Shown in pieces: positions 1 to 9,734 of a DNA stretch of 64,000 bases. Location of the stretch: positions 1 through 64,000 of IMG/VR virus record IMGVR_UViG_3300020188_000808; one strand, 5' to 3'. The translations under genes were made by a program, and so were the position numbers. The notes below the pieces were generated by a model, which saw only the letters and a list, made by a program, of their open reading frames with translations, did not search any database and had not been told where the DNA came from. Each line of letters begins with the position of its first letter. Positions within the stretch are counted from its first letter, which is position 1.

Positions 1-80
1 ACACTATACGCATCAATAGGCCTCACTACTATACTATAAGGGTCACTACTGAACAGTTCACTAGGGTTCTCACTACTATA
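1..80 (+). repeat. Short direct repeats TCACTACT
   Basis: TCACTACT at 23-30, 43-50 and 70-77; partial TCACTA at 58-63; non-coding. Confidence 0.6.
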
Positions 81-203
81 TAGAATCATGAGTTCTTTGT
101 GATTGAGCCCGTCATCTGGGTAGAGGTGACCGGTGGTGATCAGAGGAGGATCCAGGTGGTCAAAGCCAGATCTGAGGTCTAATGGTGTCGACCTGACTTT
201 CTC

Positions 204-282
204 CAATGATATCAAGAGGTTAGGTGGGGCCAGGGGCCTCTAGTATGGCCTTTCAAAAAAGTTCAATGATTTCAAGGGGTTA
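204..282 (+). promoter_or_regulatory. Two 19-bp direct repeats resembling IHF sites
   Basis: CAATGATATCAAGAGGTTA (204-222) and CAATGATTTCAAGGGGTTA (264-282); first matches WATCAANNNNTTR exactly, second has one mismatch. Confidence 0.5.
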
Positions 283-420
283 CAAGGGTGCGGAAATCAG
301 GTCGTGTAGGGTGAATTGAACTCCGGTATCAATGTTTCCAATTACGTTCCCGGCGGGTGGATCTATCTGCGATCCTCTATGTTGAACTTCCCTCTACCTC
401 CTTGCCCTTATTGTTCTTAT

Positions 421-449
421 AGTATATGGCCAAAGGCACCTAAAGTCAA
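421..449 (-). promoter_or_regulatory. Divergent sigma70-type promoter (leftward)
   Basis: Minus strand TTGACT-17-TATACT followed by the leader ATAAGAACAATAAGGGCA, identical to the forward leader at 5578-5595. Confidence 0.75.
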
Positions 450-494
450 CCAAAAAAACCCCTAAAATAAAATTATTTTTTGGTAAAATAATGG

Positions 495-523
495 TTGACA
501 TTTGGATTCAGAGATGGTATACT
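495..523 (+). promoter_or_regulatory. Early sigma70-type promoter
   Basis: TTGACA-17-TATACT with A/T-rich upstream tract. Confidence 0.85.
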
Positions 524-558
524 GTAAAGACAATAAGGAATTAGAGAGGGCATAGAAA

Positions 559-996
559 ATGAAATTAGCGATCCACACACAATACAAAGAGAACTATGGC
601 GCACATGACTGGGATGGCCAGGGTGAGTGTCCGCAGTATTGGAAGTTCAAAGGTGGAGAGACCTTTGTTATGGCCATCGAGGATCCCAATCTTAGACCTG
701 AGAACATTGATGATCTTAAGGCGTTGATTGAGTACTCAGACCACTATCAGGAGGAGTATGTCTTAGATTGGAGTTTCGTGGACGAGGGAGAGGCTGTGTG
801 TGAGGACTGGGAGACTCCCTGGACTATATACCGTGAGGCAGATGGGGCCTACTATGCGAGCCGTTGGGTGCCTGCAGAGGACTATTGGACTCCCGGCTAC
901 AAGGGCAAGGCTCAGAGCTATAAGATGGAGCTGGGTGGCGAGAGAAGCCACTATCAAGAGGAGTACGTCAAATTGGCTGAGCCTGAGATGGCTTAG
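559..996 (+). CDS. Hypothetical early phage protein
   Basis: ORF with own promoter and GAGGGCA RBS (546-552). Confidence 0.85.
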   Translation: MKLAIHTQYKENYGAHDWDGQGECPQYWKFKGGETFVMAIEDPNLRPENIDDLKALIEYSDHYQEEYVLDWSFVDEGEAVCEDWETPWTIYREADGAYYASRWVPAEDYWTPGYKGKAQSYKMELGGERSHYQEEYVKLAEPEMA

Positions 997-1029
997 ACGT
1001 GGACAGGTAGGGAGTGGAAACCCGGTTAG

Positions 1030-1089
1030 GCCTTAGACCTATATACAACTAAGGCGGGAGAGCTAGGCGCCCTCATAGAAAGGCCTAGC
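1030..1089 (+). ncRNA. Tandem hairpins; second displays GCCCUC in its loop
   Basis: GCCTTAG/CTAAGGC stem (1030-1055); GCTAGGC/GCCTAGC stem (1062-1089) with loop GCCCTCATAGAAAG. Confidence 0.55.
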
Positions 1090-1145
1090 ATTTATCTGTG
1101 GCATTTGTGCAACACCTGAGCCTTCGCCCATCGGGAGCGTAGTTT

Positions 1146-1174
1146 ATTATAACATATTTTGGACGAGATGTCAA
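1146..1174 (-). promoter_or_regulatory. Divergent antisense sigma70 promoter
   Basis: Minus strand perfect TTGACA-17-TATAAT; no downstream minus-strand gene evident. Confidence 0.8.
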
Positions 1175-1208
1175 CCAAAATAATTAGATTTTTTTTGGTA
1201 AAAAATGG

Positions 1209-1237
1209 TTGACCTTAGACTATTTTGGTGCTATAGT
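1209..1237 (+). promoter_or_regulatory. Early promoter
   Basis: TTGACC-17-TATAGT. Confidence 0.8.
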
Positions 1238-1273
1238 GTAACTATAAACTAAACAACGCAAAGAGGGCAAACT

Positions 1274-1537
1274 ATGCAAAACATTAAATTTCCGTTCGCA
1301 GTACAACTTGCAGGGGACAGCATTTGGGGCTATGAGGGTCCGCAAACTGTCTCAGTCTCAGACATCGCTGTGTACGAGGATGAGGACTACAAGATGATCG
1401 ACGTAGTACACGATACAACGTGGGAGATCTACACAGACAGTGGCTTTGAGGCCGCAATTAGCAAAGCACTTGGCTATGAGGTGCAATTTACAGAGCAAGG
1501 TATGCAACAAAACGGCATGGCCTCTATGGAAGCATAG
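1274..1537 (+). CDS. Hypothetical early protein
   Basis: ORF, promoter, GAGGGCA RBS. Confidence 0.85.
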   Translation: MQNIKFPFAVQLAGDSIWGYEGPQTVSVSDIAVYEDEDYKMIDVVHDTTWEIYTDSGFEAAISKALGYEVQFTEQGMQQNGMASMEA

Positions 1538-1551
1538 CATAAAAAAAATGG

Positions 1552-1580
1552 TTGACACTATAGCATTTTGGTGCTATAGT
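1552..1580 (+). promoter_or_regulatory. Early promoter
   Basis: TTGACA-17-TATAGT. Confidence 0.85.
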
Positions 1581-1603
1581 GTTAATATAATTAGGAGGGC
1601 AAT

Positions 1604-2260
1604 ATGAAAAAGACTATTATAGCAACAGCGATCTTGGCATGTTTGCATACGGCGGCCGCAGGGGCAGAGAAGCTGACATCATTCGATCACGCGGCAGAGC
1701 TAACAGATCAAGCCAAGACCATACTATTCCAAGAGCTGAACGATCAGAACGCAGAGAACCACACACATCCTGCGATCACTTGTCTAGCAGAGAACATCTA
1801 CTTTGAAGCACGAGGCGAGAGCTTTAAGGCCAAGATAGCAGTGGCCAACGTCACACGTAATAGAGTAGAGGACAGCAGATGGCCGAGTACCTACTGTGGT
1901 GTGGTTCAGCAGGGACCTGTGAGGGAATCATGGAAGACCAAGAAGATCAAGGACCTTCCGGACAACCAGCGAGTGTATTACCCACGAAAGCACAGATGTC
2001 AGTTCAGTTGGTACTGTGATGGGGTCAAAGATGTGATATGGGCCAACATGGAACGCACAGGAGAGACCATCGAAGGCAATGCTAGAGCTTGGAGAGAATC
2101 AGTACGTATTGCGATAGCCACACTGGCTCAGGGTGATTACATCATCAAGGACAACACTGGTGGGGCCACTCACTACTATAATCACAACCTAGTTGATCCG
2201 CATTGGGCAGACAGCTATAAAACCACAGCCGTTGTGGGCAATCATACGTTCAAAAAATAG
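1604..2260 (+). CDS. Cell wall hydrolase, SleB/Hydrolase_2 family, with signal peptide
   Basis: Motifs CLAENIYFEARGE, CQFSWYCDG, GATHYY, GNHTF; hydrophobic N-terminus. Confidence 0.9.
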   Translation: MKKTIIATAILACLHTAAAGAEKLTSFDHAAELTDQAKTILFQELNDQNAENHTHPAITCLAENIYFEARGESFKAKIAVANVTRNRVEDSRWPSTYCGVVQQGPVRESWKTKKIKDLPDNQRVYYPRKHRCQFSWYCDGVKDVIWANMERTGETIEGNARAWRESVRIAIATLAQGDYIIKDNTGGATHYYNHNLVDPHWADSYKTTAVVGNHTFKK

Positions 2261-2263
2261 GGG

Positions 2264-2292
2264 TTGACAATTGGATTGGATGATGCTATTAT
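2264..2292 (+). promoter_or_regulatory. Early promoter
   Basis: TTGACA-17-TATTAT. Confidence 0.8.
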
Positions 2293-2320
2293 ATAAACAC
2301 AATAAGGAAATGAGGGCACA

Positions 2321-2644
2321 ATGAAAATTTTAGACATAGAAACAGATGCAACATGGCAGAGTGGTTCAAGCCTCGCAGGCTATGTGACAACCACTTATGA
2401 GGATATCGTGGCCAAGTTTGGTGAGCCAACAGCCGCTGGTGATAAGACCACCGCAGAATGGACACTTGAATTCAAGGTTCTAGAGGACGATGCAGAGGAC
2501 GAGGACGATTGGGACTACGTCTACGCAACCATCTATGACTGGAAAGAATCAAGCACGCCTATGGGGCAGTACCGTTGGCACATTGGTGGGTTCGACAATC
2601 GAGCTGAAGAATGTGTGCAACAGGCCCTGGAAAATAATGGTTGA
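2321..2644 (+). CDS. Hypothetical early protein
   Basis: ORF, promoter, GAGGGCA RBS. Confidence 0.85.
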   Translation: MKILDIETDATWQSGSSLAGYVTTTYEDIVAKFGEPTAAGDKTTAEWTLEFKVLEDDAEDEDDWDYVYATIYDWKESSTPMGQYRWHIGGFDNRAEECVQQALENNG

Positions 2645-2669
2645 CATTTGGATAAAGAGGTGCTATTAT
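2641..2669 (+). promoter_or_regulatory. Early promoter
   Basis: TTGACA-17-TATTAT. Confidence 0.8.
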
Positions 2670-2695
2670 ATAAACATAATAAGGAGGGCAACTAG

Positions 2696-2902
2696 ATGGG
2701 CATGTATAATCTAATAGAAGACAACGTAAACAAGTTCTGGGACATAGCCAACGACAAGGCTGGAGAGTGCGAGAGCTTGGATGAATTCGTTGAAGCAATG
2801 ACTCCGCACGTGGATCTACTACAGGGTAGTTCCGAAGGAGAGTGCGTTGAGGAAGCAATCAGCGAGGCTTGGGGCGAATACTGGGCCAAATATAATATGT
2901 AA
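2696..2902 (+). CDS. Hypothetical acidic early protein
   Basis: ORF with AGGAGGGCA RBS. Confidence 0.8.
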   Translation: MGMYNLIEDNVNKFWDIANDKAGECESLDEFVEAMTPHVDLLQGSSEGECVEEAISEAWGEYWAKYNM

Positions 2903-2909
2903 TTAGGGG

Positions 2910-2938
2910 TTGACTTTTGGTTAACTTGGTGCTATTAT
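2910..2938 (+). promoter_or_regulatory. Early promoter
   Basis: TTGACT-17-TATTAT. Confidence 0.8.
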
Positions 2939-2968
2939 ATAAGAACAATAACAAACAAAGAGGGCAAA

Positions 2969-3169
2969 ATGAAAACAACGATTAACACAATTTCCGGACT
3001 ATTGATAGCAGTTGGACTGATGGCAATGGCAGGTTCAGCCAACGACTGTGATGGTGCTTGTATGGACACGGCCAACACCTTAGGTGAGATGCTAATGGTA
3101 GCAGGTGTAGGTTTTACCATGGTGCTGTTTGGTGCAATGGTCTTAATCAGCAACAGCCAGGAGCAATAG
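2969..3169 (+). CDS. Small membrane protein
   Basis: Two hydrophobic segments; GAGGGCA RBS. Confidence 0.8.
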   Translation: MKTTINTISGLLIAVGLMAMAGSANDCDGACMDTANTLGEMLMVAGVGFTMVLFGAMVLISNSQEQ

Positions 3170-3170
3170 G

Positions 3171-3335
3171 ATGTTGGAAGTAATTGGATTCATCGCTGTA
3201 GCATATCTTATCTTTAAATTCGCACCCGCAATCATCGAAGCAGGGTTCAAGTTCGCTGTGATCTGTTTGGGATTCGTAGCGTTCCTGTTCATCTGTGCAT
3301 GGATTTGGGGTAGCATTTTGGTAATGATTAATTAA
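3171..3335 (+). CDS. Small membrane protein (54 aa, not in ORF track)
   Basis: MLEVIGFIAVAYLIFKF...WGSILVMIN; AGGAG upstream; two hydrophobic segments. Confidence 0.7.
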   Translation: MLEVIGFIAVAYLIFKFAPAIIEAGFKFAVICLGFVAFLFICAWIWGSILVMIN

Positions 3336-3344
3336 AATAAATGG

Positions 3345-3373
3345 TTGACATTCAATTAAATTGAGTGTATACT
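3345..3373 (+). promoter_or_regulatory. Early promoter
   Basis: TTGACA-17-TATACT. Confidence 0.85.
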
Positions 3374-3404
3374 GTAAGTATAACAATTAGGAAACGAGGG
3401 CAAT

Positions 3405-3629
3405 ATGAAACTTAAAAACATTGGTTCAAATATGACAGAGATCGAAGTTAACGGCAAGAGCATCATGTTCAGCTATGAGACTCCGGTTGCAGGCTACTGT
3501 GAGCAGGGTGCGTTTAGAACAGACACCAAGTTCAGCGTAACCACTAGCAAACAGATCAACAAGTACCTAGGTGGCAAAGACGTAGGTAGGGTTGTACCCC
3601 AGGCTTGGATTGAAGGTTTGGTAGCCTAA
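3405..3629 (+). CDS. Hypothetical early protein
   Basis: ORF, GAGGGCA RBS. Confidence 0.85.
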   Translation: MKLKNIGSNMTEIEVNGKSIMFSYETPVAGYCEQGAFRTDTKFSVTTSKQINKYLGGKDVGRVVPQAWIEGLVA

Positions 3630-3823
3630 TGAAAACGATTTTGGTAGTCCTTTGTGCTATGAGCTTGACCGCTTGTGGTACAATGACTCCAAAAGATATG
3701 TTGAAGACCGCGAATGCGTTCCGAAATGTATCTAAGATTACCGCTCCAGGTGTAGAAGAAGAATTGGTTGTTATGACCAAAGACATCTTTGATCCTGCAA
3801 GGGGTGGTGGTTTCAACAAATAA
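3629..3823 (+). CDS. Putative lipoprotein
   Basis: Signal peptide with lipobox LTAC; TAATG coupling to the previous gene. Confidence 0.7.
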   Translation: MKTILVVLCAMSLTACGTMTPKDMLKTANAFRNVSKITAPGVEEELVVMTKDIFDPARGGGFNK

Positions 3824-3826
3824 TGG

Positions 3827-3855
3827 TTGACATACTCACCATTAGATGTTATTAT
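3827..3855 (+). promoter_or_regulatory. Early promoter
   Basis: TTGACA-17-TATTAT. Confidence 0.8.
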
Positions 3856-3893
3856 AACTTGAGTATGAATAGGCAAACAATAGGAGGCCAACA

Positions 3894-4223
3894 ATGAGTA
3901 CCACTAAACTGTACACGGTAGCCGGCACGTCAAACAACAACGGCAAAACAAAAGTAAGGTTCGCGAATGACTATGTGAGTAGATTCAAGATCCTTGTAAA
4001 GAATCAACACGAGGACATCAAAATCGTAGAACTGCCATCAGCAATGAACAAGGCAGATGTATGTAAGTTCTTGTCAACTCATGCAGAGTTCCAGACAGAA
4101 GCACAACAGTCTGCGATCAATGAGTTCGTTGTAAGAAACATCAAACTTGATGCGACTCCAACAGCACCGGCACAGCCTGTAGCTGAAGCAGAGACCATTG
4201 AGGTAGAGCTAGAGACTGCATAG
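3894..4223 (+). CDS. Hypothetical protein
   Basis: ORF with canonical AGGAGG RBS. Confidence 0.85.
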   Translation: MSTTKLYTVAGTSNNNGKTKVRFANDYVSRFKILVKNQHEDIKIVELPSAMNKADVCKFLSTHAEFQTEAQQSAINEFVVRNIKLDATPTAPAQPVAEAETIEVELETA

Positions 4224-4266
4224 TATTGCAGTCCAATAGGGGAGGCACTGACTAAGAGCCTTCCTT

Positions 4267-4359
4267 TGAAGAAGCTGGTTGTGAATGGTTAATACTAGTT
4301 CACGTTGCATTAAACCAGAGCCCGAACGTTGCGTACCAAGGCTCGGCCAGCTTACTTCA
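4267..4359 (+). ncRNA. Putative three-way-junction structured RNA
   Basis: Closing stem TGAAG-AAGCTGG/CCAGCTT-CTTCA with inner stems GTGAA-TGGT/ACTA-TTCAC and GAGCC/GGCTC; two more hairpins upstream (4214-4233, 4238-4266). Confidence 0.5.
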
Positions 4360-4377
4360 TAAATTTTCATTTAGAGG

Positions 4378-4406
4378 TTGACAACCGTCCTTGGTTGTGT
4401 TATAGT
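4378..4406 (+). promoter_or_regulatory. Promoter of tRNA pair
   Basis: TTGACA-17-TATAGT. Confidence 0.85.
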
Positions 4407-4456
4407 AAGACATCATAAGAAGATCAGAAGAGGATCAAATCAAATCATTTTAGTTA

Positions 4457-4533
4457 CTGCCCTTAGCTCAGCTGGATAGAGCAACAGCCTTCTAAGCTGT
4501 AGGTCGTAGGTTCGAATCCTACAGGGCAGGCCA
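4457..4533 (+). tRNA. tRNA-Arg(UCU)
   Basis: Acceptor CTGCCCT/AGGGCAG, anticodon loop CTTCTAA, T-loop TTCGAAT, encoded CCA. Confidence 0.95.
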
Positions 4534-4538
4534 ACAAT

Positions 4539-4626
4539 GCTCGCGTGATGGAATTGGTAGACATACCGGACTTAAAATCCGGAGGCTGTAATGGCCGTGG
4601 CGGTTCGAGTCCGCCCGCGAGTACCA
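4539..4626 (+). tRNA. tRNA-Leu(UAA)
   Basis: Acceptor GCTCGCG/CGCGAGT, anticodon loop CTTAAAA, long variable arm, GGTTCGAGTCC, encoded CCA. Confidence 0.95.
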
Positions 4627-4638
4627 AAGGTAAGTACC

Positions 4639-4679
4639 GCCCGGGGGAGCAACCGCCCTCATGTAAGACTTCCCCGGGC
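4639..4679 (+). ncRNA. GC-rich hairpin displaying GCCCUC
   Basis: GCCCGGGGGAG/CTTCCCCGGGC 11-bp stem; loop CAACCGCCCTCATGTAAGA; directly downstream of tRNA-Leu. Confidence 0.6.
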
Positions 4680-4694
4680 AGGGAAATAAAATGG

Positions 4695-4723
4695 TTGACA
4701 AGTGATCCAATTGGTGTTATAGT
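4695..4723 (+). promoter_or_regulatory. Early promoter
   Basis: TTGACA-17-TATAGT. Confidence 0.85.
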
Positions 4724-4756
4724 ATATGTATAGTTAGAACAAACGGAGGGCATCCA

Positions 4757-4945
4757 ATGATTAGAGTACACACAACAGGACTTGAAGGTGAACGTTTCCT
4801 CAAGCTAGATGAAGTCAACATCCACACACAGAAGATTGACTCTTACAACGGCGCACCATACATCTTGTTCGAGCACAAGGACTATCCAGGAGGAGCGTTG
4901 AGTGCTACATTCGATGGCACCTATTGGGACTGTGATTTAGATTAA
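4757..4945 (+). CDS. Hypothetical early protein
   Basis: ORF, GGAGGGCA RBS. Confidence 0.8.
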   Translation: MIRVHTTGLEGERFLKLDEVNIHTQKIDSYNGAPYILFEHKDYPGGALSATFDGTYWDCDLD

Positions 4946-4952
4946 TTAGGGG

Positions 4953-4981
4953 TTGACAACTGCACCTTTTGGTGCTATAGT
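4953..4981 (+). promoter_or_regulatory. Early promoter
   Basis: TTGACA-17-TATAGT. Confidence 0.85.
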
Positions 4982-5008
4982 ATAAACATAATAACAAATG
5001 AGGGCACT

Positions 5009-5281
5009 ATGAACAATCAATATGAAGTTACCAAGCAGAACGCAAAACTAGCCGACATTGGTCGTGCGATGATGGACTATTCAGAGTTCTACGGTGTTGC
5101 TAATGGACTGGGTCATCTCAAAGATGCTCAGCTGGCCACACTGAATCAGCTCACCCATGTAGGCGGAATGCTTACCAAAATTGGTGTGCTGTTTGGACCG
5201 CGAATGAGTGATCTAAGCGATAGCGACAGAGAATTAGTTGCAAAGTTCAGCAAAAAAGAACTTGACATTCAGAACGTTTGA
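5009..5281 (+). CDS. Hypothetical early protein
   Basis: ORF, GAGGGCA RBS. Confidence 0.85.
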   Translation: MNNQYEVTKQNAKLADIGRAMMDYSEFYGVANGLGHLKDAQLATLNQLTHVGGMLTKIGVLFGPRMSDLSDSDRELVAKFSKKELDIQNV

Positions 5282-5290
5282 TTGTATACT
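5262..5290 (+). promoter_or_regulatory. Early promoter
   Basis: TTGACA-17-TATACT. Confidence 0.8.
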
Positions 5291-5322
5291 GTAAGTATAA
5301 ACAATAAAGAAGAGAGGGCAAA

Positions 5323-5541
5323 ATGGCAACAGATTTGAAATCACACGCACAGGGCGTATCATTGACAAGGTTCGCTGGTGGTGTGGACCGCGGAGTATGC
5401 GTCCAGGTCACAACCAAGAAGCGTCAACCTGTAGGCACAGAGTTCTTTGACTCATTGCAATTGACACGAGCACAGGCCGCGGCATTGGCGGCTGACTTGA
5501 TGGACTTTGCTCAGGGCAGAGAAACAGAAGATTTTGAATAA
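5323..5541 (+). CDS. Hypothetical early protein
   Basis: ORF, GAGGGCA RBS. Confidence 0.85.
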   Translation: MATDLKSHAQGVSLTRFAGGVDRGVCVQVTTKKRQPVGTEFFDSLQLTRAQAAALAADLMDFAQGRETEDFE

Positions 5542-5548
5542 TTAGAGG

Positions 5549-5577
5549 TTGACAACTGTAGCATGTGATGCTATAGT
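5549..5577 (+). promoter_or_regulatory. Early promoter
   Basis: TTGACA-17-TATAGT. Confidence 0.85.
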
Positions 5578-5624
5578 ATAAGAACAATAAGGGCACACTA
5601 ACACACACAACTGAGAGGGTTAAC

Positions 5625-6629
5625 ATGACAACACAAATTGAAATTAAAAGCGGCACGTACAAGATCCGTGGCAAAGACGTAGAACTTGCGGGCATGGTCT
5701 TTCCAATGGTGGAAGAGTTCAAAGTAGGTAGCCAAGGTGGTTACGTAACAGTGGATGGATCAGCAATGGCTGGCTTCCCAGACCGTAACATCAAGATCAA
5801 AGTTAACAGCAGTGATGACTATGCTGTTACTAAAAAGAAGACAACTGTACGTGAAGAAACAGATGAAGAGACCATTGAGCGTCTTAGAGAACGTTTCCAG
5901 ATCCTAGAAGACATGACCAAAGCATGTAAGAAAGGCGATGTACGTGCAATGATCGTAACAGGCCCTCCAGGTGTGGGCAAGAGTTTTGGTGTAGAGAAAG
6001 TGCTAGGCAAGCATGACATGATCGCAACGTTAGGTGAACGACCTGCCAAGTATCAGGTAGTCAAGGGTGCTATGAGTGCAATTGGTCTCTACTGTAAACT
6101 GTTCAACTATGCAGACAAAGACAATGTACTAGTGTTTGATGACTGTGACTCAATCCTACAAGAAGACCTGAGTTTAAACATCTTAAAAGCCGCACTGGAT
6201 TCGAAAGCTTCAAGACGTATACATTGGAACACAGACAGTTTCAAGTTGCGTAACGAAGGTGTGCCGGATTCATTCGAGTTCAAAGGCTCATGCATATTCA
6301 TTACCAACATCAAGTTTGAAAACGTTAAGAGCAAGAAGATGAGAGATCACCTAGCGGCCATTGAAAGTAGATGCCACTATATCGATCTTACCATTGACAG
6401 CGAACGTGAGAAGATGTTGCGTATCAAACAAATCGTAGGTGATGGCATGTTAGCTAAACATGCACTAGATGAAGAAACACACGAACGAGTGGTAGACTTC
6501 ATCGACATCAACAAAAAGAATCTCCGAGAGCTTAGTCTAAGGACTGTGCTTAAGGTGGCCGATCTCGCTAAAGCCTTTCCAGACAACTGGGAAGCAATGG
6601 CTGAGAATACAGTACTGCAACGAGCCTAA
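5625..6629 (+). CDS. AAA+ family P-loop ATPase
   Basis: Walker A GPPGVGKS, Walker B LVFDDCD, sensor FITN, arginine-finger-like ESRC. Confidence 0.85.
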   Translation: MTTQIEIKSGTYKIRGKDVELAGMVFPMVEEFKVGSQGGYVTVDGSAMAGFPDRNIKIKVNSSDDYAVTKKKTTVREETDEETIERLRERFQILEDMTKACKKGDVRAMIVTGPPGVGKSFGVEKVLGKHDMIATLGERPAKYQVVKGAMSAIGLYCKLFNYADKDNVLVFDDCDSILQEDLSLNILKAALDSKASRRIHWNTDSFKLRNEGVPDSFEFKGSCIFITNIKFENVKSKKMRDHLAAIESRCHYIDLTIDSEREKMLRIKQIVGDGMLAKHALDEETHERVVDFIDINKKNLRELSLRTVLKVADLAKAFPDNWEAMAENTVLQRA

Positions 6630-6696
6630 TAGCCCTCAACCCTGGCTCTGTACTGTACCGAACCCCTGCTAGTGTGCCCTCGCTATGCAGGGGTTC
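6608..6696 (+). ncRNA. Two tandem hairpins each displaying (U)GCCCU(C)
   Basis: TACAGTAC..GAGCC/GGCTC..GTACTGTA with GCCCTC (6632-6637) in the loop; GAACCCCTGC-TAGTG/CGCTA-GCAGGGGTTC with loop TGCCCT (6675-6680). Confidence 0.65.
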
Positions 6697-6746
6697 ACCT
6701 TGACAAAAACTCCATAAAATAAATGAAAAAAACCTGCTGATTTTGG

Positions 6747-6775
6747 TTGACATATTGGATTGCAGACTGTATACT
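6747..6775 (+). promoter_or_regulatory. Early promoter
   Basis: TTGACA-17-TATACT. Confidence 0.85.
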
Positions 6776-6807
6776 GTAAGTATAAACAATAAAGAAGAGG
6801 GTACGCA

Positions 6808-7137
6808 ATGAGTTATATCACAGACAAATGGAACGCAGGTGAAGTACACTTCCAAGATGGCGCGGCTGGTTGGTTGTTTGATTCAGGTGAGTTCCGTCCG
6901 CTTATGGACGATGCTATGCGAGAACTACACTATGAAGGCCTGGTTGATGCAGACTGTGTAGAGATCACAGCGTTTGCCAGAGACTTGTACACAACCAAAT
7001 CAATTGCAGAGTACCGTGTAGCACAGAGTCAACGTAGTGCAGAACAGATTGCTGAAGAACGAAGCGAAGCTAGAGCCGCTATGGGCGAGGGTGTAGAGAT
7101 GGTAAACATCATAACAGGAGAACGATACACAACTTAG
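6808..7137 (+). CDS. Hypothetical early protein
   Basis: ORF, GAGGGTA RBS variant. Confidence 0.85.
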   Translation: MSYITDKWNAGEVHFQDGAAGWLFDSGEFRPLMDDAMRELHYEGLVDADCVEITAFARDLYTTKSIAEYRVAQSQRSAEQIAEERSEARAAMGEGVEMVNIITGERYTT

Positions 7138-7154
7138 AGTTGTGTATTTTTTGG

Positions 7155-7183
7155 TTGACCTTTGGCTCAACTGAATGTATTAT
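7155..7183 (+). promoter_or_regulatory. Early promoter
   Basis: TTGACC-17-TATTAT. Confidence 0.75.
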
Positions 7184-7214
7184 AATAGTATAAACTAAAC
7201 AAAGCGAGGGCAAT

Positions 7215-7598
7215 ATGCAAACAACAACACAAACAACAGACACAGAACTATTAGTAGACACAGCACGTAAGGCCGCTGAAGGTGCACAGGCCAAGTTCCT
7301 AGCAGAGTGGACAGCCAACACAGGTGGCAATGAGTATGGTGAGCCAATGTACTGTGGCTTTGCTTGGGTTACTATACACCCAGAGCACAAGGGCAACACT
7401 AGGTTGGGTAAGCTAGAACGTAGAGTAATAGAGAGCATGGGCTTTCGTAAGGACTGGACAGGCAAGGCTTATCAACTGTGGAACTGCACAGGCTATGCTG
7501 GTCAGAGCATGGACGTTAAAGAAGCAGGGGCACAGGCCTATGCTGAGGTACTGCGAGGTGCAGGGTTTAAAGCATACATGGGTAGCAGAGCAGACTAA
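7215..7598 (+). CDS. Hypothetical early protein
   Basis: ORF, GAGGGCA RBS. Confidence 0.85.
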   Translation: MQTTTQTTDTELLVDTARKAAEGAQAKFLAEWTANTGGNEYGEPMYCGFAWVTIHPEHKGNTRLGKLERRVIESMGFRKDWTGKAYQLWNCTGYAGQSMDVKEAGAQAYAEVLRGAGFKAYMGSRAD

Positions 7599-7609
7599 GG
7601 GAGGTCACA

Positions 7610-7729
7610 ATGTATACACTACACGTACCAGCAGGCACATATGCAGAGACTAGCCTACTACGGCTAGCAGTACTAGTCTTAGCACATAGGCTAGAGCACT
7701 TGTTCAAGGGTGAAGGCTTTAGAGATTAG
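7610..7729 (+). CDS. Small hypothetical protein (39 aa, not in ORF track)
   Basis: GGGAGGT RBS; MYTLHVPAGTYAETSLL...GEGFRD. Confidence 0.6.
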   Translation: MYTLHVPAGTYAETSLLRLAVLVLAHRLEHLFKGEGFRD

Positions 7730-7767
7730 TCCTAGCCTCTGAGGAGCGTGACACTCCATCAAGTCAC

Positions 7768-7802
7768 AGAAGGAGGATCGGAAACGGTTCTCCTTTTCTT
7801 TT
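7768..7802 (+). terminator. Intrinsic terminator ending the early region
   Basis: GGAGGATCG-GAAA-CGGTTCTCC stem followed by TTTTCTTTT. Confidence 0.8.
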
Positions 7803-7992
7803 GACCCCTGGAGGCATAAGAAAAAAATAAAAAATAATTTCGGCCGGGGGGCATATATATAATATTTTCAAACACTTACACAGCACATGCATGGTCTAAT
7901 TCCACCACCCAACTTTGAAAAGTACTTCACCTTATTTTTTTGTAATCTAATTTTTTACCCTGCAGGACCCATTTCGGAAAATAAATACATGT

Positions 7993-8178
7993 ATGCACAA
8001 GGACGTTCCCACACTAGAAGACCGTGTACTAGCTATCAAACTGCGTATAGCACAGTTCAAAGCTGAACACCCAGGGTTATACACTAGTCATACTACTGCA
8101 CACACTAGCAGTCATACGACTACTACTACTCGTACAGCTACTACTAGCATCAAGGACAAACTCAATAGCATACGCTAA
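7993..8178 (+). CDS. Small hypothetical protein, Thr-rich tail
   Basis: TAAATA 5 nt upstream of the ATG. Confidence 0.55.
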   Translation: MHKDVPTLEDRVLAIKLRIAQFKAEHPGLYTSHTTAHTSSHTTTTTRTATTSIKDKLNSIR

Positions 8179-8322
8179 GAGTGCCTCGCGTGTAGTACTA
8201 GTATAGTCGCTACACATGATTAACTCAATGTGTGTGTTGTTAAGTGTATACATAATGATACGCACACAGGTTTAAATACTACTAGTACACAGTCAGGGTA
8301 ATCTATTTAGGGGGCTAAGTCA

Positions 8323-8805
8323 ATTATCGATCCGTTCACAGCCATAGCGGCGGCTACCACTGCATTCAATACTGTTAAGAAGTTTGTACATGCAGGACAA
8401 GAACTAGAGAACACACTTGGTCAAATGGGCAAGTGGTATACTAGTGTGAGTGACTTTAGACATGCACAACAGCAGGCCAAGAACCCACCATTGTTTAAAA
8501 AACTGTTTGCCGCAGGTAGTGTAGAGGAAGAAGCACTAGCACTACTAGTACACGAAAAGAAAATAGCAGAACAAGAAAAAGAACTACAGCAGATGCTCAA
8601 CATGCGTTATGGCTGGGGCACATGGGATGAACTAGTACAGATGAGGCGTAAGATACGTGCCAAGCGAGAAGCTACTGTATACGCACAAGAACAACGTCAA
8701 CGAGCGTTTATTGAAGCTGTGACCATAGGGGCTATGATCATAGCGATGTGTGTTGTCATCGGCGGTATTGTATACGCTGTGGGTCTAGGGCAAGGACGCT
8801 GGTAA
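8323..8805 (+). CDS. Hypothetical membrane protein; probable ATT start
   Basis: Frame is open 34 codons upstream of the ATG at 8425 (IIDPFTAIAAATTAF...); AGGGGG before ATT at 8323; C-terminal TM helix. Confidence 0.75.
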   Translation: MIDPFTAIAAATTAFNTVKKFVHAGQELENTLGQMGKWYTSVSDFRHAQQQAKNPPLFKKLFAAGSVEEEALALLVHEKKIAEQEKELQQMLNMRYGWGTWDELVQMRRKIRAKREATVYAQEQRQRAFIEAVTIGAMIIAMCVVIGGIVYAVGLGQGRW

Positions 8806-9027
8806 ATGCTACATGCGTTCATGTTGATGGTGCTCATAGCTGATCAACCACAACCAAATCCAATGTATTTTCGTAGCATAGATGTATGCCAATACTATGC
8901 GGCACGTGTACCACGTCAATACGGCAATTATGGTAGCAAACACCTAGTACCTGCAGAGCATAGAATAACTGCTTACTGCAAGCCTGTGTACATTAATAGC
9001 AACACTAAGACCCTATACGATCACTAG
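8806..9027 (+). CDS. Hypothetical protein
   Basis: ORF abutting the previous stop; hydrophobic N-terminus. Confidence 0.75.
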   Translation: MLHAFMLMVLIADQPQPNPMYFRSIDVCQYYAARVPRQYGNYGSKHLVPAEHRITAYCKPVYINSNTKTLYDH

Positions 9028-9275
9028 GTTTAAACGCATTTAAACAGCGTTATACGCTTGTTTCCACGTCTGAGCAGTATGTGTACCCTAAAACACCTTA
9101 AGTGCAAAATAAGAGCCATTTAGGCTGGATTTAGGCACACTACAGACACCGTAAATGCATGGTAAAAAACACCCACGAAAGAGGTTTACATTGTGATTTA
9201 AGAGGTGGATAAAATTTTGCGTACTGCACTTCGTGCTCTAAAATTACCGCGATCGCCTAAAGGCTCTAAATGGCT

Positions 9276-9734
9276 TTACCGCTTCGCGGCTTTGTCTGCA
9301 CATGCAAACCAATGTGCAAGTTCTGGATGCTTGTCCTGGTTGGGTATTAGTTGTGTGGGCAATGGCGCATCTCCCAAACTGTTGAGCATGTCCTTGTAGA
9401 CCTGTGCATGATCACGCCATTCAGGATTGTTGGCTATCCAAAATATCACCCTGTCCAAGTATACGTCATAGTCTGGTGTTAGACTGTTTGGGGGAAGTGT
9501 TTGATCTTGTGTGTGACTCAGCTCTACAACTACACCGTAGTGTTCTTTGAGTTCGTCTATCCACTGTAGCTGATCCAAACTAGCTGTAACTGTTAGAGCA
9601 CTATGTACAAACTCAATGCGTACAGGATGTCCGTTGGTCTTTGTGGCTTCTTGAAAGTGCCATTCAACTTCTTGTTCTATGTCAGGCCATTCACTGCCAT
9701 AGTGTTTGAATCCATGTCCTTGTAGTCTAAGCAT
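9276..9734 (-). CDS. Hypothetical protein
   Basis: Start reassigned to the ATG 5 nt after TAAATA (9740-9745). Confidence 0.7.
   Translation of the reverse strand: MLRLQGHGFKHYGSEWPDIEQEVEWHFQEATKTNGHPVRIEFVHSALTVTASLDQLQWIDELKEHYGVVVELSHTQDQTLPPNSLTPDYDVYLDRVIFWIANNPEWRDHAQVYKDMLNSLGDAPLPTQLIPNQDKHPELAHWFACADKAAKR

What the first reader, a model, noticed from the sequence alone, without database searches (positions are those of the whole stretch)
997..1237. Perfect antisense promoter firing into the GCCCUC hairpin locus
Seen: a minus-strand TTGACA-17-TATAAT (1146-1174) sits back-to-back with the forward promoter at 1209 and has no convincing gene downstream. Its transcript would show GAGGGC in a hairpin loop and be antisense to the 1030-1089 hairpins and gene 559-996. 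An imperfect palindrome TGTGGCA-N4-TGCAACA (1097-1114) lies inside. Inference: a sponge for the anti-RBS RNA, or a CsrB-like decoy for a GAGGGC-binding protein.
Basis: partly seen in the sequence, partly recalled or inferred. Interest (0 to 1): 0.6.

Follow-up and report, generated by a model that had tools for sequence, protein, structure and literature searches.

The report
Conserved antisense promoter facing anti-RBS hairpin
A perfect bacterial-type promoter pointing backwards inside a jumbo phage's early-gene array is real and conserved in related marine phages, always firing into a structured RNA hairpin whose loop is complementary to the phage's own unusual ribosome-binding sites, so the two may form an RNA-only switch on early protein synthesis.

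Summary
TTGACA-17-TATAAT with a TGn extended -10 lies on the minus strand at 1174-1146, back to back with the forward promoter at 1209-1237. It is the only 12/12 promoter in the 9 kb early array. No credible gene lies downstream.

It is not chance. Four lineages of related metagenomic phage contigs, found without using the promoter as a search term, keep both hexamers, the TGn and the spacer length, while the spacer sequence differs.

The promoter is one half of a module that matches no Rfam family:
- a plus-strand hairpin with GCCCUC in its apical loop, usually right after a phage tRNA cluster;
- a conserved 20-27 nt stretch;
- the convergent promoter.

Covariation shows the hairpin is selected as plus-strand RNA: 298 Watson-Crick and 26 G-U pairs with 0 mismatches, against 26 mismatches on the other strand.

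GCCCUC is the complement of GAGGGCA, the ribosome-binding site of all 11 early genes. Sister lineages that use GGAGCGAA carry UUCGCUCC loops instead.

Most likely the promoter makes a short untranslated antisense RNA that masks or destroys the anti-RBS hairpin RNA and blocks read-through. This is inferred, because no strand-specific RNA data could be read.

The parts
1146..1174 (-). Sigma-70 promoter: -35 TTGACA (1174-1169), 17-nt spacer, TGT + -10 TATAAT (1154-1146). Predicted start about 1140-1138.
   Evidence: The hexamers, TGn and spacer length are kept with diverged spacers in L007, L087 and L097.
1175..1208 (.). A/T-rich tract shared by the two back-to-back promoters (UP-element-like for both).
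   Evidence: The same GG-TTGACA upstream flank is seen in the forward early promoters.
1114..1140 (-). Conserved initial transcribed stretch ('domain 2'), ACGCTCCCGATGGGCGAAGGCTCAGGT. It travels with the promoter.
   Evidence: It is 27/27 identical in L007, in a different gene context. It is homologous to CTGATGCCCGAAGGTTCTGG of the tRNA-linked members.
1097..1114 (.). Imperfect palindrome / weak hairpin B (TGTGGCA-TTTG-TGCAACA).
   Evidence: In L162 a different perfect palindrome, TTGCATACGTATGCAA, sits at the same place.
1062..1089 (+). Hairpin C: 7-bp stem GCTAGGC/GCCTAGC, 14-nt loop with GCCCTC (1069-1074).
   Evidence: Compensatory stems GAGAGGC/GCCTCTC (L196) and GGGAGGC/GCCTCCC (L193).
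1030..1055 (+). Hairpin D (GCCTTAG...CTAAGGC).
   Evidence: Compensatory CCTAAC/GTTAGG in L196.
1209..1237 (+). Forward early promoter of gene 1274-1537 (TTGACC-17-TATAGT, TGn). RBS GAGGGCA at 1263.
559..996 (+). Upstream early gene (145 aa, no Pfam/PHROG family). The antisense RNA would cover its 3' UTR and, if long enough, its 3' end.
4637..4682 (+). Second GCCCUC-loop hairpin, canonical type, right after tRNA-Leu (4539-4626). It has no convergent promoter, and the forward promoter at 4695 follows at once.
   Evidence: (53.5 bits, E 4e-11).
6660..6696 (+). Third GCCCUC-loop hairpin, after ORF 5625-6629. A weaker fourth one lies around 6632.
   Evidence: (z -4.19).

Best explanation
The minus-strand element is a working early-class sigma-70 promoter. 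It is one half of a conserved two-part module.

Half one is a plus-strand hairpin RNA whose apical loop (GCCCUC) is complementary to GAGGGCA, the extended Shine-Dalgarno sequence of the phage's early genes.

Half two is this convergent promoter. Its untranslated transcript starts near 1139 with a conserved 27-nt leader. It then runs antisense through the palindrome, the GCCCUC hairpin and hairpin D, towards the 3' end of gene 559-996.

The proposed mechanism has two effects:
1. The antisense RNA pairs with plus-strand hairpin or read-through RNA. It pairs perfectly in cis, and through 9 nt (AUGAGGGCG with CGCCCUCAU) with the tRNA-trailer hairpin at 4637-4682. That masks the anti-RBS loop or exposes the duplex to RNase III.
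2. Head-on polymerases keep upstream transcription out of the next cassette.

What is shown:
- the promoter sequence and its conservation;
- the module's architecture;
- the plus-strand polarity of the hairpin;
- the complementarity of loop and RBS, and their covariation between lineages.

What is inferred:
- that the promoter fires;
- the length of the RNA;
- any pairing or any effect on translation.

The confidence given (0.45) is for the antisense function. That the promoter itself is real and under selection I put at about 0.85.
For: Promoter:
- 12/12 with TGn, and the only perfect promoter in the early array.
- Lineages found independently of the promoter keep the hexamers, the TGn and a 17-18 nt spacer, while the spacer sequences differ. 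These are L007 (found by blastn of 997-1273) and L087 and L097 (found as neighbours of gene 1274-1537).
- It shares the GG-TTGACA/A-tract flank of the forward early promoters.

Module:
- 44 distinct members in viral and metagenome contigs.

Hairpin:
- 12 pairs, 6 of them with double compensatory changes, none broken in 27 sequences.
- 298 Watson-Crick + 26 G-U + 0 mismatches on the plus strand, against 26 mismatches on the minus strand.

RBS link:
- All 11 plus-strand GAGGGC in 1-9500 are GAGGGCA 3-7 nt before an ATG. Only 3 occur on the plus strand of the other 258 kb, plus 5 on its minus strand.
- Sense-strand GCCCTC lies in hairpin loops in 29 of 39 cases over 11 loci.
- GGAGCG(A/T)A lineages carry AUUCGCUCC loops in homologous hairpins.

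Other:
- No gene downstream.
- No Rfam family.
Against: - There is no RNA evidence. The metatranscriptome runs were available only as contigs of flat depth, some up to 53 kb long, so they cannot show a start, a strand or even transcription.
- No intrinsic terminator was found for the minus transcript (tails).
- The module comes apart. Hairpins at 4637-4682 and 6660-6696 have no convergent promoter. The L007 lineage has promoter plus leader without a hairpin. The hairpin therefore does not need the antisense RNA.
- In the L007 lineage the minus RNA carries ACGCUCC, which is anti-RBS for that lineage, not an RBS mimic. One uniform 'sponge' logic does not fit all members.
- Most family members were retrieved with a pattern that required both the promoter and GCCCTC. 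Their perfect promoters and GCCCTC motifs are therefore ascertained, not independent evidence.
- The leader is conserved in sequence rather than in fold, which the antisense model does not explain.
Confidence: 0.45

Rival explanations
1. Head-on barrier. The promoter's job is occupancy and collision, not its RNA. A perfect-consensus promoter holds RNA polymerase tightly and fires against the tRNA operon or gene 559-996. It ends their transcripts where no U-tract terminator exists and insulates the next cassette.
For: - Promoter-coupled GCCCUC hairpins never have a U-rich tail: 0 of 59 have at least 6 T in 9 nt. Among the other GCCCUC hairpins 12 of 108 do, and those close tandem arrays.
- The forward cassettes otherwise follow each other without terminators.
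- Convergent-promoter interference is established in coliphage 186 (own knowledge).
Against: - It does not explain why 20-27 nt of initial transcribed sequence are conserved in sequence across lineages.
- A U-tract would be a far cheaper terminator.
- Two hairpins in this window do without it.
Confidence: 0.25
2. Micro-ORF. The promoter drives a leaderless or near-leaderless mRNA for a tiny peptide that begins M-x-E-G-S-(G/D). Either the peptide or the act of translating it matters.
For: - 22 of 44 members have ATG exactly 6 nt after the -10. That is the geometry of many real leaderless genes of this genome.
- The five window-type members have the same codons at 14-15 nt.
- AUG-NNN-GAA-GGN-UCN is kept while all three bases of codon 2 vary, and some third positions change silently.
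Against: - 17 of 44 have no ATG or an unrelated 3-7 aa ORF, yet they keep the promoter and the hairpin.
- Peptide length runs from 3 to more than 36 aa.
- Everything after residue 6 is dictated by the antisense of the hairpin.
- In this window the ATG (1131) is 14 nt from the -10 and has no Shine-Dalgarno sequence.
Confidence: 0.1
3. Protein decoy (CsrB-like). The RNA titrates a protein that recognises GAGGGC(A) on early mRNAs.
For: The minus RNA carries the early RBS motif, and in the tRNA-linked relatives it sits in an apical loop.
Against: - There is one motif per RNA, not an array.
- In this copy it is predicted to be paired.
- The stem carries 26 A-C/C-A mismatches on this strand.
- The L007 lineage lacks the motif in its minus RNA.
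- No candidate binding protein was identified.
Confidence: 0.05
4. Primer or origin promoter. A strong promoter without a gene makes an R-loop or primer RNA for DNA replication near the early end of the genome.
For: It is a gene-less strong promoter near a contig end, next to an A/T tract. T4 and T7 origins use promoters (own knowledge).
Against: - In relatives the module lies in the middle of forward arrays and next to tRNA genes, at changing positions.
- No DNA-unwinding element or iterons were seen.
- The GC-skew turning point is at about 8-10 kb, not here.
Confidence: 0.05
5. Chance match with no function.
For: The region is A/T-rich, next to a real promoter.
Against: - About 0.1 perfect matches are expected per genome.
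- The hexamers are conserved with diverged spacers in independently found lineages.
Confidence: 0.03

Closest known systems
Lambda OOP RNA (promoter pO) and similar phage cis-antisense RNAs (own knowledge)
   Same: A short untranslated RNA from a host-type promoter set against an early operon. It overlaps the 3' end or 3' UTR of the upstream gene, and duplex formation with RNase III is the expected outcome.
   Different: OOP has a defined intrinsic terminator and one protein-gene target. Here no terminator was found, the usual target is a tRNA-trailer hairpin, and there is no sequence relation.
Anti-RBS RNAs of phages: P1/P7 c4, P22 sar (own knowledge)
   Same: A phage RNA whose exposed loop is complementary to ribosome-binding sites of the phage's own genes. 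c4 is cut out of a precursor by tRNA-processing enzymes, as a tRNA trailer would be.
   Different: Those resemble the plus-strand GCCCUC hairpin, not the promoter under study. They target one gene, whereas here the motif is shared by all early genes. No antidote RNA is known for them.
PeSL cassettes of T4-type phages (PMC2839356, PMC4122927)
   Same: Arrays of small early genes, each with a strong sigma-70-like promoter and a stem-loop. The cassettes are shuffled by recombination between the repeats. Joints at promoter repeats were seen here too.
   Different: PeSL promoters and stem-loops point the same way as the genes. PMC2839356 has no mention of 'antisense' or 'opposite strand', and I know of no report of a convergent promoter or an RBS-complementary loop in PeSLs.
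CsrB/RsmZ-type sponges and tRNA 3'ETS sponges (own knowledge)
   Same: RNAs that act by titration. 3'ETS-leuZ comes from a tRNA trailer. Relatives carry 3-5 tandem GCCCUC loops in one transcript.
   Different: The multi-loop arrays are on the plus strand and carry the complement of the RBS. The minus RNA has a single motif, and there is no GGA/CsrA-type consensus.
Convergent-promoter interference, coliphage 186 pR/pL (own knowledge)
   Same: Two face-to-face promoters a few hundred bases or less apart, one much stronger than the other.
   Different: In 186 it is a lysis-lysogeny switch between two protein operons. Here one side has no gene.
ncRNA001/002 of Pseudomonas phage PA5oct (PMC7318152)
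   Same: PA5oct is the nearest cultured relative (terminase 53% identical). It depends on the host polymerase, uses TTGAC/TATAATA promoters, and makes abundant RNAs of unknown function in the early terminal-repeat region.
   Different: No sequence or architectural likeness. Those RNAs are on the gene strand.

Membership tests
Sigma-70 promoter (extended -10 class) | -35 TTGACA, 17 +/- 1 bp spacer, -10 TATAAT, TGn, A/T-rich upstream tract | tested here: met
   12/12, TGT, A-tract at 1175-1208.
Sigma-70 promoter (extended -10 class) | Hexamers and spacing conserved in relatives while the spacer sequence drifts | tested here: met
   Spacers: TCTCGTCCAAAATATGT, AACCGGTATTTCCATGT, ACCACCGGCTGTTCGTGT, TCTCAAAATTTTTATGT.
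Sigma-70 promoter (extended -10 class) | A transcription start about 7 nt after the -10 | not testable with these tools
   Only assembled contigs of the RNA runs could be laid.
Cis-antisense sRNA (OOP-like) | Promoter convergent to, and transcript overlapping, an expressed sense RNA | tested here: met
   Geometry.
Cis-antisense sRNA (OOP-like) | Defined 3' end by an intrinsic terminator, giving a short discrete RNA | tested here: not met
   No minus-strand terminator-like site between 1 and 1146. Hairpin tails are U-poor.
CsrB/RsmZ-like protein sponge | Many repeats of the binding motif displayed in loops of one RNA | tested here: not met
   One GAGGGC in the minus RNA, predicted to be paired in this copy.
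PeSL cassette | Early promoter plus stem-loop in the same orientation as the flanking genes | tested here: not met
   The promoter is on the opposite strand. The forward units 4637-4723 and 6660-6775 do fit.
Any Rfam 15 family | Covariance-model match | tested here: not met
   Nothing over 997-1237 at E <= 1. Only tRNAs next to the element in six relatives.
Protein-coding gene (micro-ORF) | Start codon, frame and length conserved across the family | tested here: inconclusive
   27 of 44 keep M-x-E-G-S. 17 of 44 do not. Lengths run from 3 to more than 36 aa.
Plus-strand GCCCUC hairpin RNA family (defined here) | Covarying stem, G-U pairs only on the plus strand, GCCCUC in the apical loop | tested here: met
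   for the tRNA-trailer type. For the window copy at 1062-1089, stem covariation is seen, but it has no G-U pair that tells the strand.

The most novel reading that the evidence does not exclude
The phage clade runs an RNA-only control circuit on its early genes.

- Hairpins with GCCCUC loops are released from tRNA trailers and 3' UTRs. In sister lineages the loops are UUCGCUCC.
- These loops pair with the lineage-specific extended Shine-Dalgarno sequence (GAGGGCA or GGAGCGAA) carried by every early mRNA, and shut off their translation.
- The RNA from the convergent perfect promoter is the built-in antidote that sets the timing.

This would be an RNA analogue of the T4 RegA/RegB early shut-off, together with its own antagonist.
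Probability: 0.2. Interest if true: 0.8.

Novelty: new variant of a known kind. Interest (0 to 1): 0.62.

Why it matters
Gene-less antisense promoters in phage genomes are usually dismissed as chance matches. This one is fixed in a whole clade of uncultured jumbo phages related to PA5oct.

It is also tied to a covarying RNA hairpin whose loop tracks the clade's private ribosome-binding motif. If the pairing is real, these phages mark their early mRNAs with an extended Shine-Dalgarno 'address', and they regulate those mRNAs with small RNAs rather than proteins.

The idea can be tested with reporters and compensatory mutations without culturing the phage. The module also gives a ready-made, very strong, compact promoter/hairpin unit and a new RNA family for annotation.

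Tried and rejected
- Rfam, on the window and on six relatives: only tRNAs.
- RNA evidence. Salt-marsh metatranscriptome runs hold the stretch. They were served only as contigs with flat depth, some up to 53 kb long, so they say nothing on starts, strand or expression. At most 6,000 letters were laid.
- GenBank phages: no DNA relative of 400-2400.
- Pfam and PHROGs for the flanking genes: blank, except the cell-wall hydrolase at 1604-2260.
- A common fold for the conserved leader: none. Neither strand is favoured (-349 against -363 kcal/mol summed over 44 sequences). The small hairpin CGCUCCCGAUGGGCG is lost in L193.
- Trans targets of the leader in the phage genome: only chance 9-12-mers.
- Scans of viral contigs with leader-only patterns, meant as an unbiased sample of promoters: each returned only L115.
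- The hairpin model R1, run on about 90 loci fetched through the neighbouring genes: only L097 and the window's own hairpin at 4628-4690 with its copies in the near-identical contig (L004, L100).
- PA5oct ncRNA001/002: unrelated.
- Type I toxin-antitoxin reading: rejected. The overlapped gene encodes 145 aa, and in most relatives it is replaced by tRNAs.
- L211, a contig labelled as human gut metagenome, came back from the pattern scan. It was left out of all scripts as a precaution. I did not take it for human DNA.

Full report
**Where the window lies.** The window is the first 64 kb of a 267,783-bp IMG/VR virus record, linear, with an estimated completeness of 75%. Salt-marsh metagenomes hold it. 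It is a jumbo myovirus with terminase, sheath, tube and helicases. Its terminase is 53% identical to that of Pseudomonas phage PA5oct, the nearest cultured relative. PA5oct depends on the host RNA polymerase (PMC7318152).

Bases 1-9000 are richer in G+C than the rest. They carry a plus-strand array of small genes. Each gene has its own promoter of the form (A)ATGG-TTGACA-N17(TGn)-TATA(C/G)T. Each also has an A-rich 5' UTR that ends in GAGGGCA 3-7 nt before the ATG.

**The observation.**
- The minus-strand promoter at 1174-1146 scores 12/12 and has TGT before the -10 and an A-tract upstream.
- The thirteen strongest forward promoters of the array all score 11/12, so this is the only perfect one there.
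- It stands back to back with the forward promoter at 1209-1237.
- Minus-strand ORFs downstream are at most 29 aa.
- The palindrome at 1097-1114 and the hairpins at 1030-1055 and 1062-1089 are present.
- One detail differs. In the predicted fold of this copy's minus RNA, GAGGG pairs with CUUUC and is not in a loop.

**Is it more than chance?** Yes. Three kinds of relatives were found without using the promoter as a search term.
- A near-identical contig (L004/L100) keeps 997-1273 at 100%, while the neighbouring gene is 96% identical in protein.
- A lineage whose homologue of gene 559-996 is only 61% identical (L007/L098) has, 2.3 kb away from that homologue and right after another gene's stop codon, TTGACA-17-TATAAT with TGT. 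It is followed by 27 bases identical to window 1140-1114, and the spacer is unrelated.
- Two lineages found through gene 1274-1537 (L087, L097) have perfect promoters at the same place before that gene, again with other spacers.

Conserved hexamers and spacing with a free spacer are the footprint of a used promoter.

**The module.** In L087 and L097 the promoter faces the 3' end of a plus-strand tRNA cluster (Met, Arg, Leu). Between the two lie a long hairpin with GCCCTC in its loop and a conserved stretch.

A pattern built on these features (GCCCTC, 55-80 nt, ATTATAACA, 13-15 nt, TGTCAA) recovered 44 distinct true members from viral and metagenome contigs, besides many ordinary promoters. This retrieval fixes the promoter and GCCCTC by construction. 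I therefore use these sequences only for what the pattern did not fix: the stems, the stretch between hairpin and promoter, and the context.

Thirty-nine members follow a tRNA. Five are of the window's type, behind the homologue of gene 559-996.

**Which strand is structured?** The alignment of 27 hairpins gives 12 pairs. Six have double compensatory changes and none is broken. Read on the plus strand there are 298 Watson-Crick pairs, 26 G-U pairs and no mismatch. Read on the minus strand the 26 G-U pairs become A-C mismatches.

The hairpin is therefore an RNA of the gene strand, not of the promoter's transcript.

For the window's own copy, the stems of hairpins C and D covary (GCTAGGC/GCCTAGC, GAGAGGC/GCCTCTC, GGGAGGC/GCCTCCC; CCTTAG/CTAAGG against CCTAAC/GTTAGG). 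They hold no G-U pair, so they do not tell the strand. No Rfam family matches.

**The parts separate.**
- The window has more GCCCUC-loop hairpins on the plus strand: 4637-4682, right after tRNA-Leu (canonical type, 53.5 bits with model R1), then 6660-6696, and a weaker one at 6632. None of these has a convergent promoter.
- Relatives carry tandem runs of 3-5 such hairpins, the last with a U-tract.
- Conversely, the L007 lineage has promoter plus leader without a hairpin.

The conserved stretch next to the promoter thus travels with the promoter. It reads CTGATGCCCGAAGGTTCTGG in most members and ACGCTCCCGATGGGCGAAGGCTCAGGT here. It is most simply the start of the minus transcript or an operator. 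It has no common fold.

**The link to ribosome-binding sites.**
- All 11 plus-strand GAGGGC in the first 9.5 kb are GAGGGCA before a start codon. Only 3 are on the plus strand of the other 258 kb, and 5 on its minus strand.
- In 11 loci of this class, 29 of 39 sense-strand GCCCTC lie in hairpin loops.
- Two lineages whose early genes use GGAGCG(A/T)A (L005; L007/L098) carry hairpins with the loop AUUCGCUCC instead.
- One of those hairpins matches the window's hairpin 6660-6696 in stem sequence (GA(A/G)CCCC...GGGGTTCACCTT) and in position before a promoter.

The loop therefore changes with the RBS motif. That argues for base pairing between them, in cis on read-through transcripts or in trans. 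Only two motif classes were seen, so the evidence is suggestive, not conclusive.

**What the promoter most likely does.** Its transcript would be the exact antisense of the neighbouring anti-RBS hairpin. In this genome it could also kiss the loop of hairpin 4637-4682 through 9 nt.

I take as most likely (about 0.45) that it makes an untranslated antisense RNA that neutralises plus-strand hairpin or read-through RNA and, by head-on transcription, closes the upstream unit.

The pure barrier reading (0.25) gains from the fact that promoter-coupled hairpins never carry a U-tail (0 of 59, against 12 of 108). It does not explain the conserved leader.

A micro-ORF (0.1) deserves mention:
- 22 of 44 members place ATG 6 nt after the -10. 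This is the geometry of many real leaderless genes elsewhere in this genome.
- The first codons, M-x-E-G-S, are kept with a free second codon.
- But 17 members lack the ORF, the rest of the peptide is unconstrained, and in this window the ATG is 14 nt from the -10.

A CsrB-like decoy, a replication primer and chance are unlikely, for the reasons listed under the rival explanations.

**What could not be done.** Transcription itself is unproven. The RNA runs were available as contigs only, with flat depth over coding and non-coding parts. The host is unknown.

**Comparison with known systems.** In geometry the promoter works like lambda pO/OOP. The plus-strand hairpin resembles the anti-RBS RNAs c4 and sar. 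The array resembles the PeSL cassettes of T4-type phages (PMC2839356, PMC4122927), including recombination joints at promoter repeats among strains. It is a member of none of these:
- no terminator, so not OOP-like in the strict sense;
- opposite orientation, so not a PeSL;
- a single motif, so not a Csr-type sponge.

**Verdict.** I rate it a new variant of a known kind. The finding is real and conserved and has a plausible, testable regulatory meaning. Its function remains inferred.

Noticed in passing
window 546-7212 (plus strand); whole record G000: GAGGGCA is a private ribosome-binding motif of the first 9.5 kb. There are 11 sites, all 3-7 nt before an ATG, against 3 on the plus strand and 5 on the minus strand in the other 258 kb. 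The GCA extension is not explained by the usual 16S anti-Shine-Dalgarno sequence (own knowledge).
   Followed up: partly
L098 gene-sense 10907 (= L007 6136); L005 2326: In lineages whose early genes use GGAGCG(A/T)A, homologous sense-strand hairpins carry the loop AUUCGCUCC, the complement of that motif. The loop covaries with the RBS.
   Followed up: partly
G000 16-27 kb and 190-256 kb, e.g. 217806-217778, 228914-228886, 255605-255577 (minus strand): Many consensus promoters are followed by ATG 6-7 nt after the -10, with no Shine-Dalgarno sequence. This fits leaderless mRNAs, including a J-domain-like protein that starts MDYYELLGVPRNAT.
   Followed up: no
window 6625-6700; L097 6768-6930, L186 4438-4640, L260 2183-2350, L281 4732-4950: After the homologue of ORF 5625-6629, relatives carry 3-5 tandem hairpins, each with GCCCUC in its loop, the last with a U-tract. 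This is a multi-loop plus-strand RNA. The window has two.
   Followed up: partly
window 1256/4718, 3412/5658, 4961-4965/1247-1258, 5283, 5314: Contigs of the salt-marsh runs join different cassettes at the repeated promoter/5' UTR sequences. Strains differ by cassette shuffling, as described for PeSLs.
   Followed up: no
L114 around 24-60 and 400-430; L215 1168-1200 and about 1500: (A)GCAGCCGG recurs on the gene strand at three places: at the start of the tRNA operon, after the hairpin, and inside the spacer of the convergent promoter. It may be an operator common to both face-to-face promoters. It is absent from the window.
   Followed up: no
window 1-494: The left end has no long ORF. It holds repeats of CACTACTATA-like words (1-90) and a minus-strand promoter at 449-421 (10/12). 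That promoter has an early-type 5' UTR (ATAAGAACAATAAGGGCAAGGAGG...) but no start codon nearby. Both this contig and its near-identical relative end here.
   Followed up: no
window 2939-3002 and other early 5' UTRs: The early 5' UTRs are built of AAnAAnAA-like repeats, which gave a weak CrcZ hit in Rfam (19.8 bits, far below threshold). This may point to Hfq/Crc-type binding.
   Followed up: no
window 1009-1013, 1052-1056, 1130-1134: There are three GGGAG on the plus strand, so three CUCCC in the minus transcript, two of them in predicted single-stranded linkers. This is an anti-Shine-Dalgarno-like feature of the minus RNA. In L007 the 5' end GUACGCUCC is the complement of that lineage's GGAGCGUAC sites.
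   Followed up: partly
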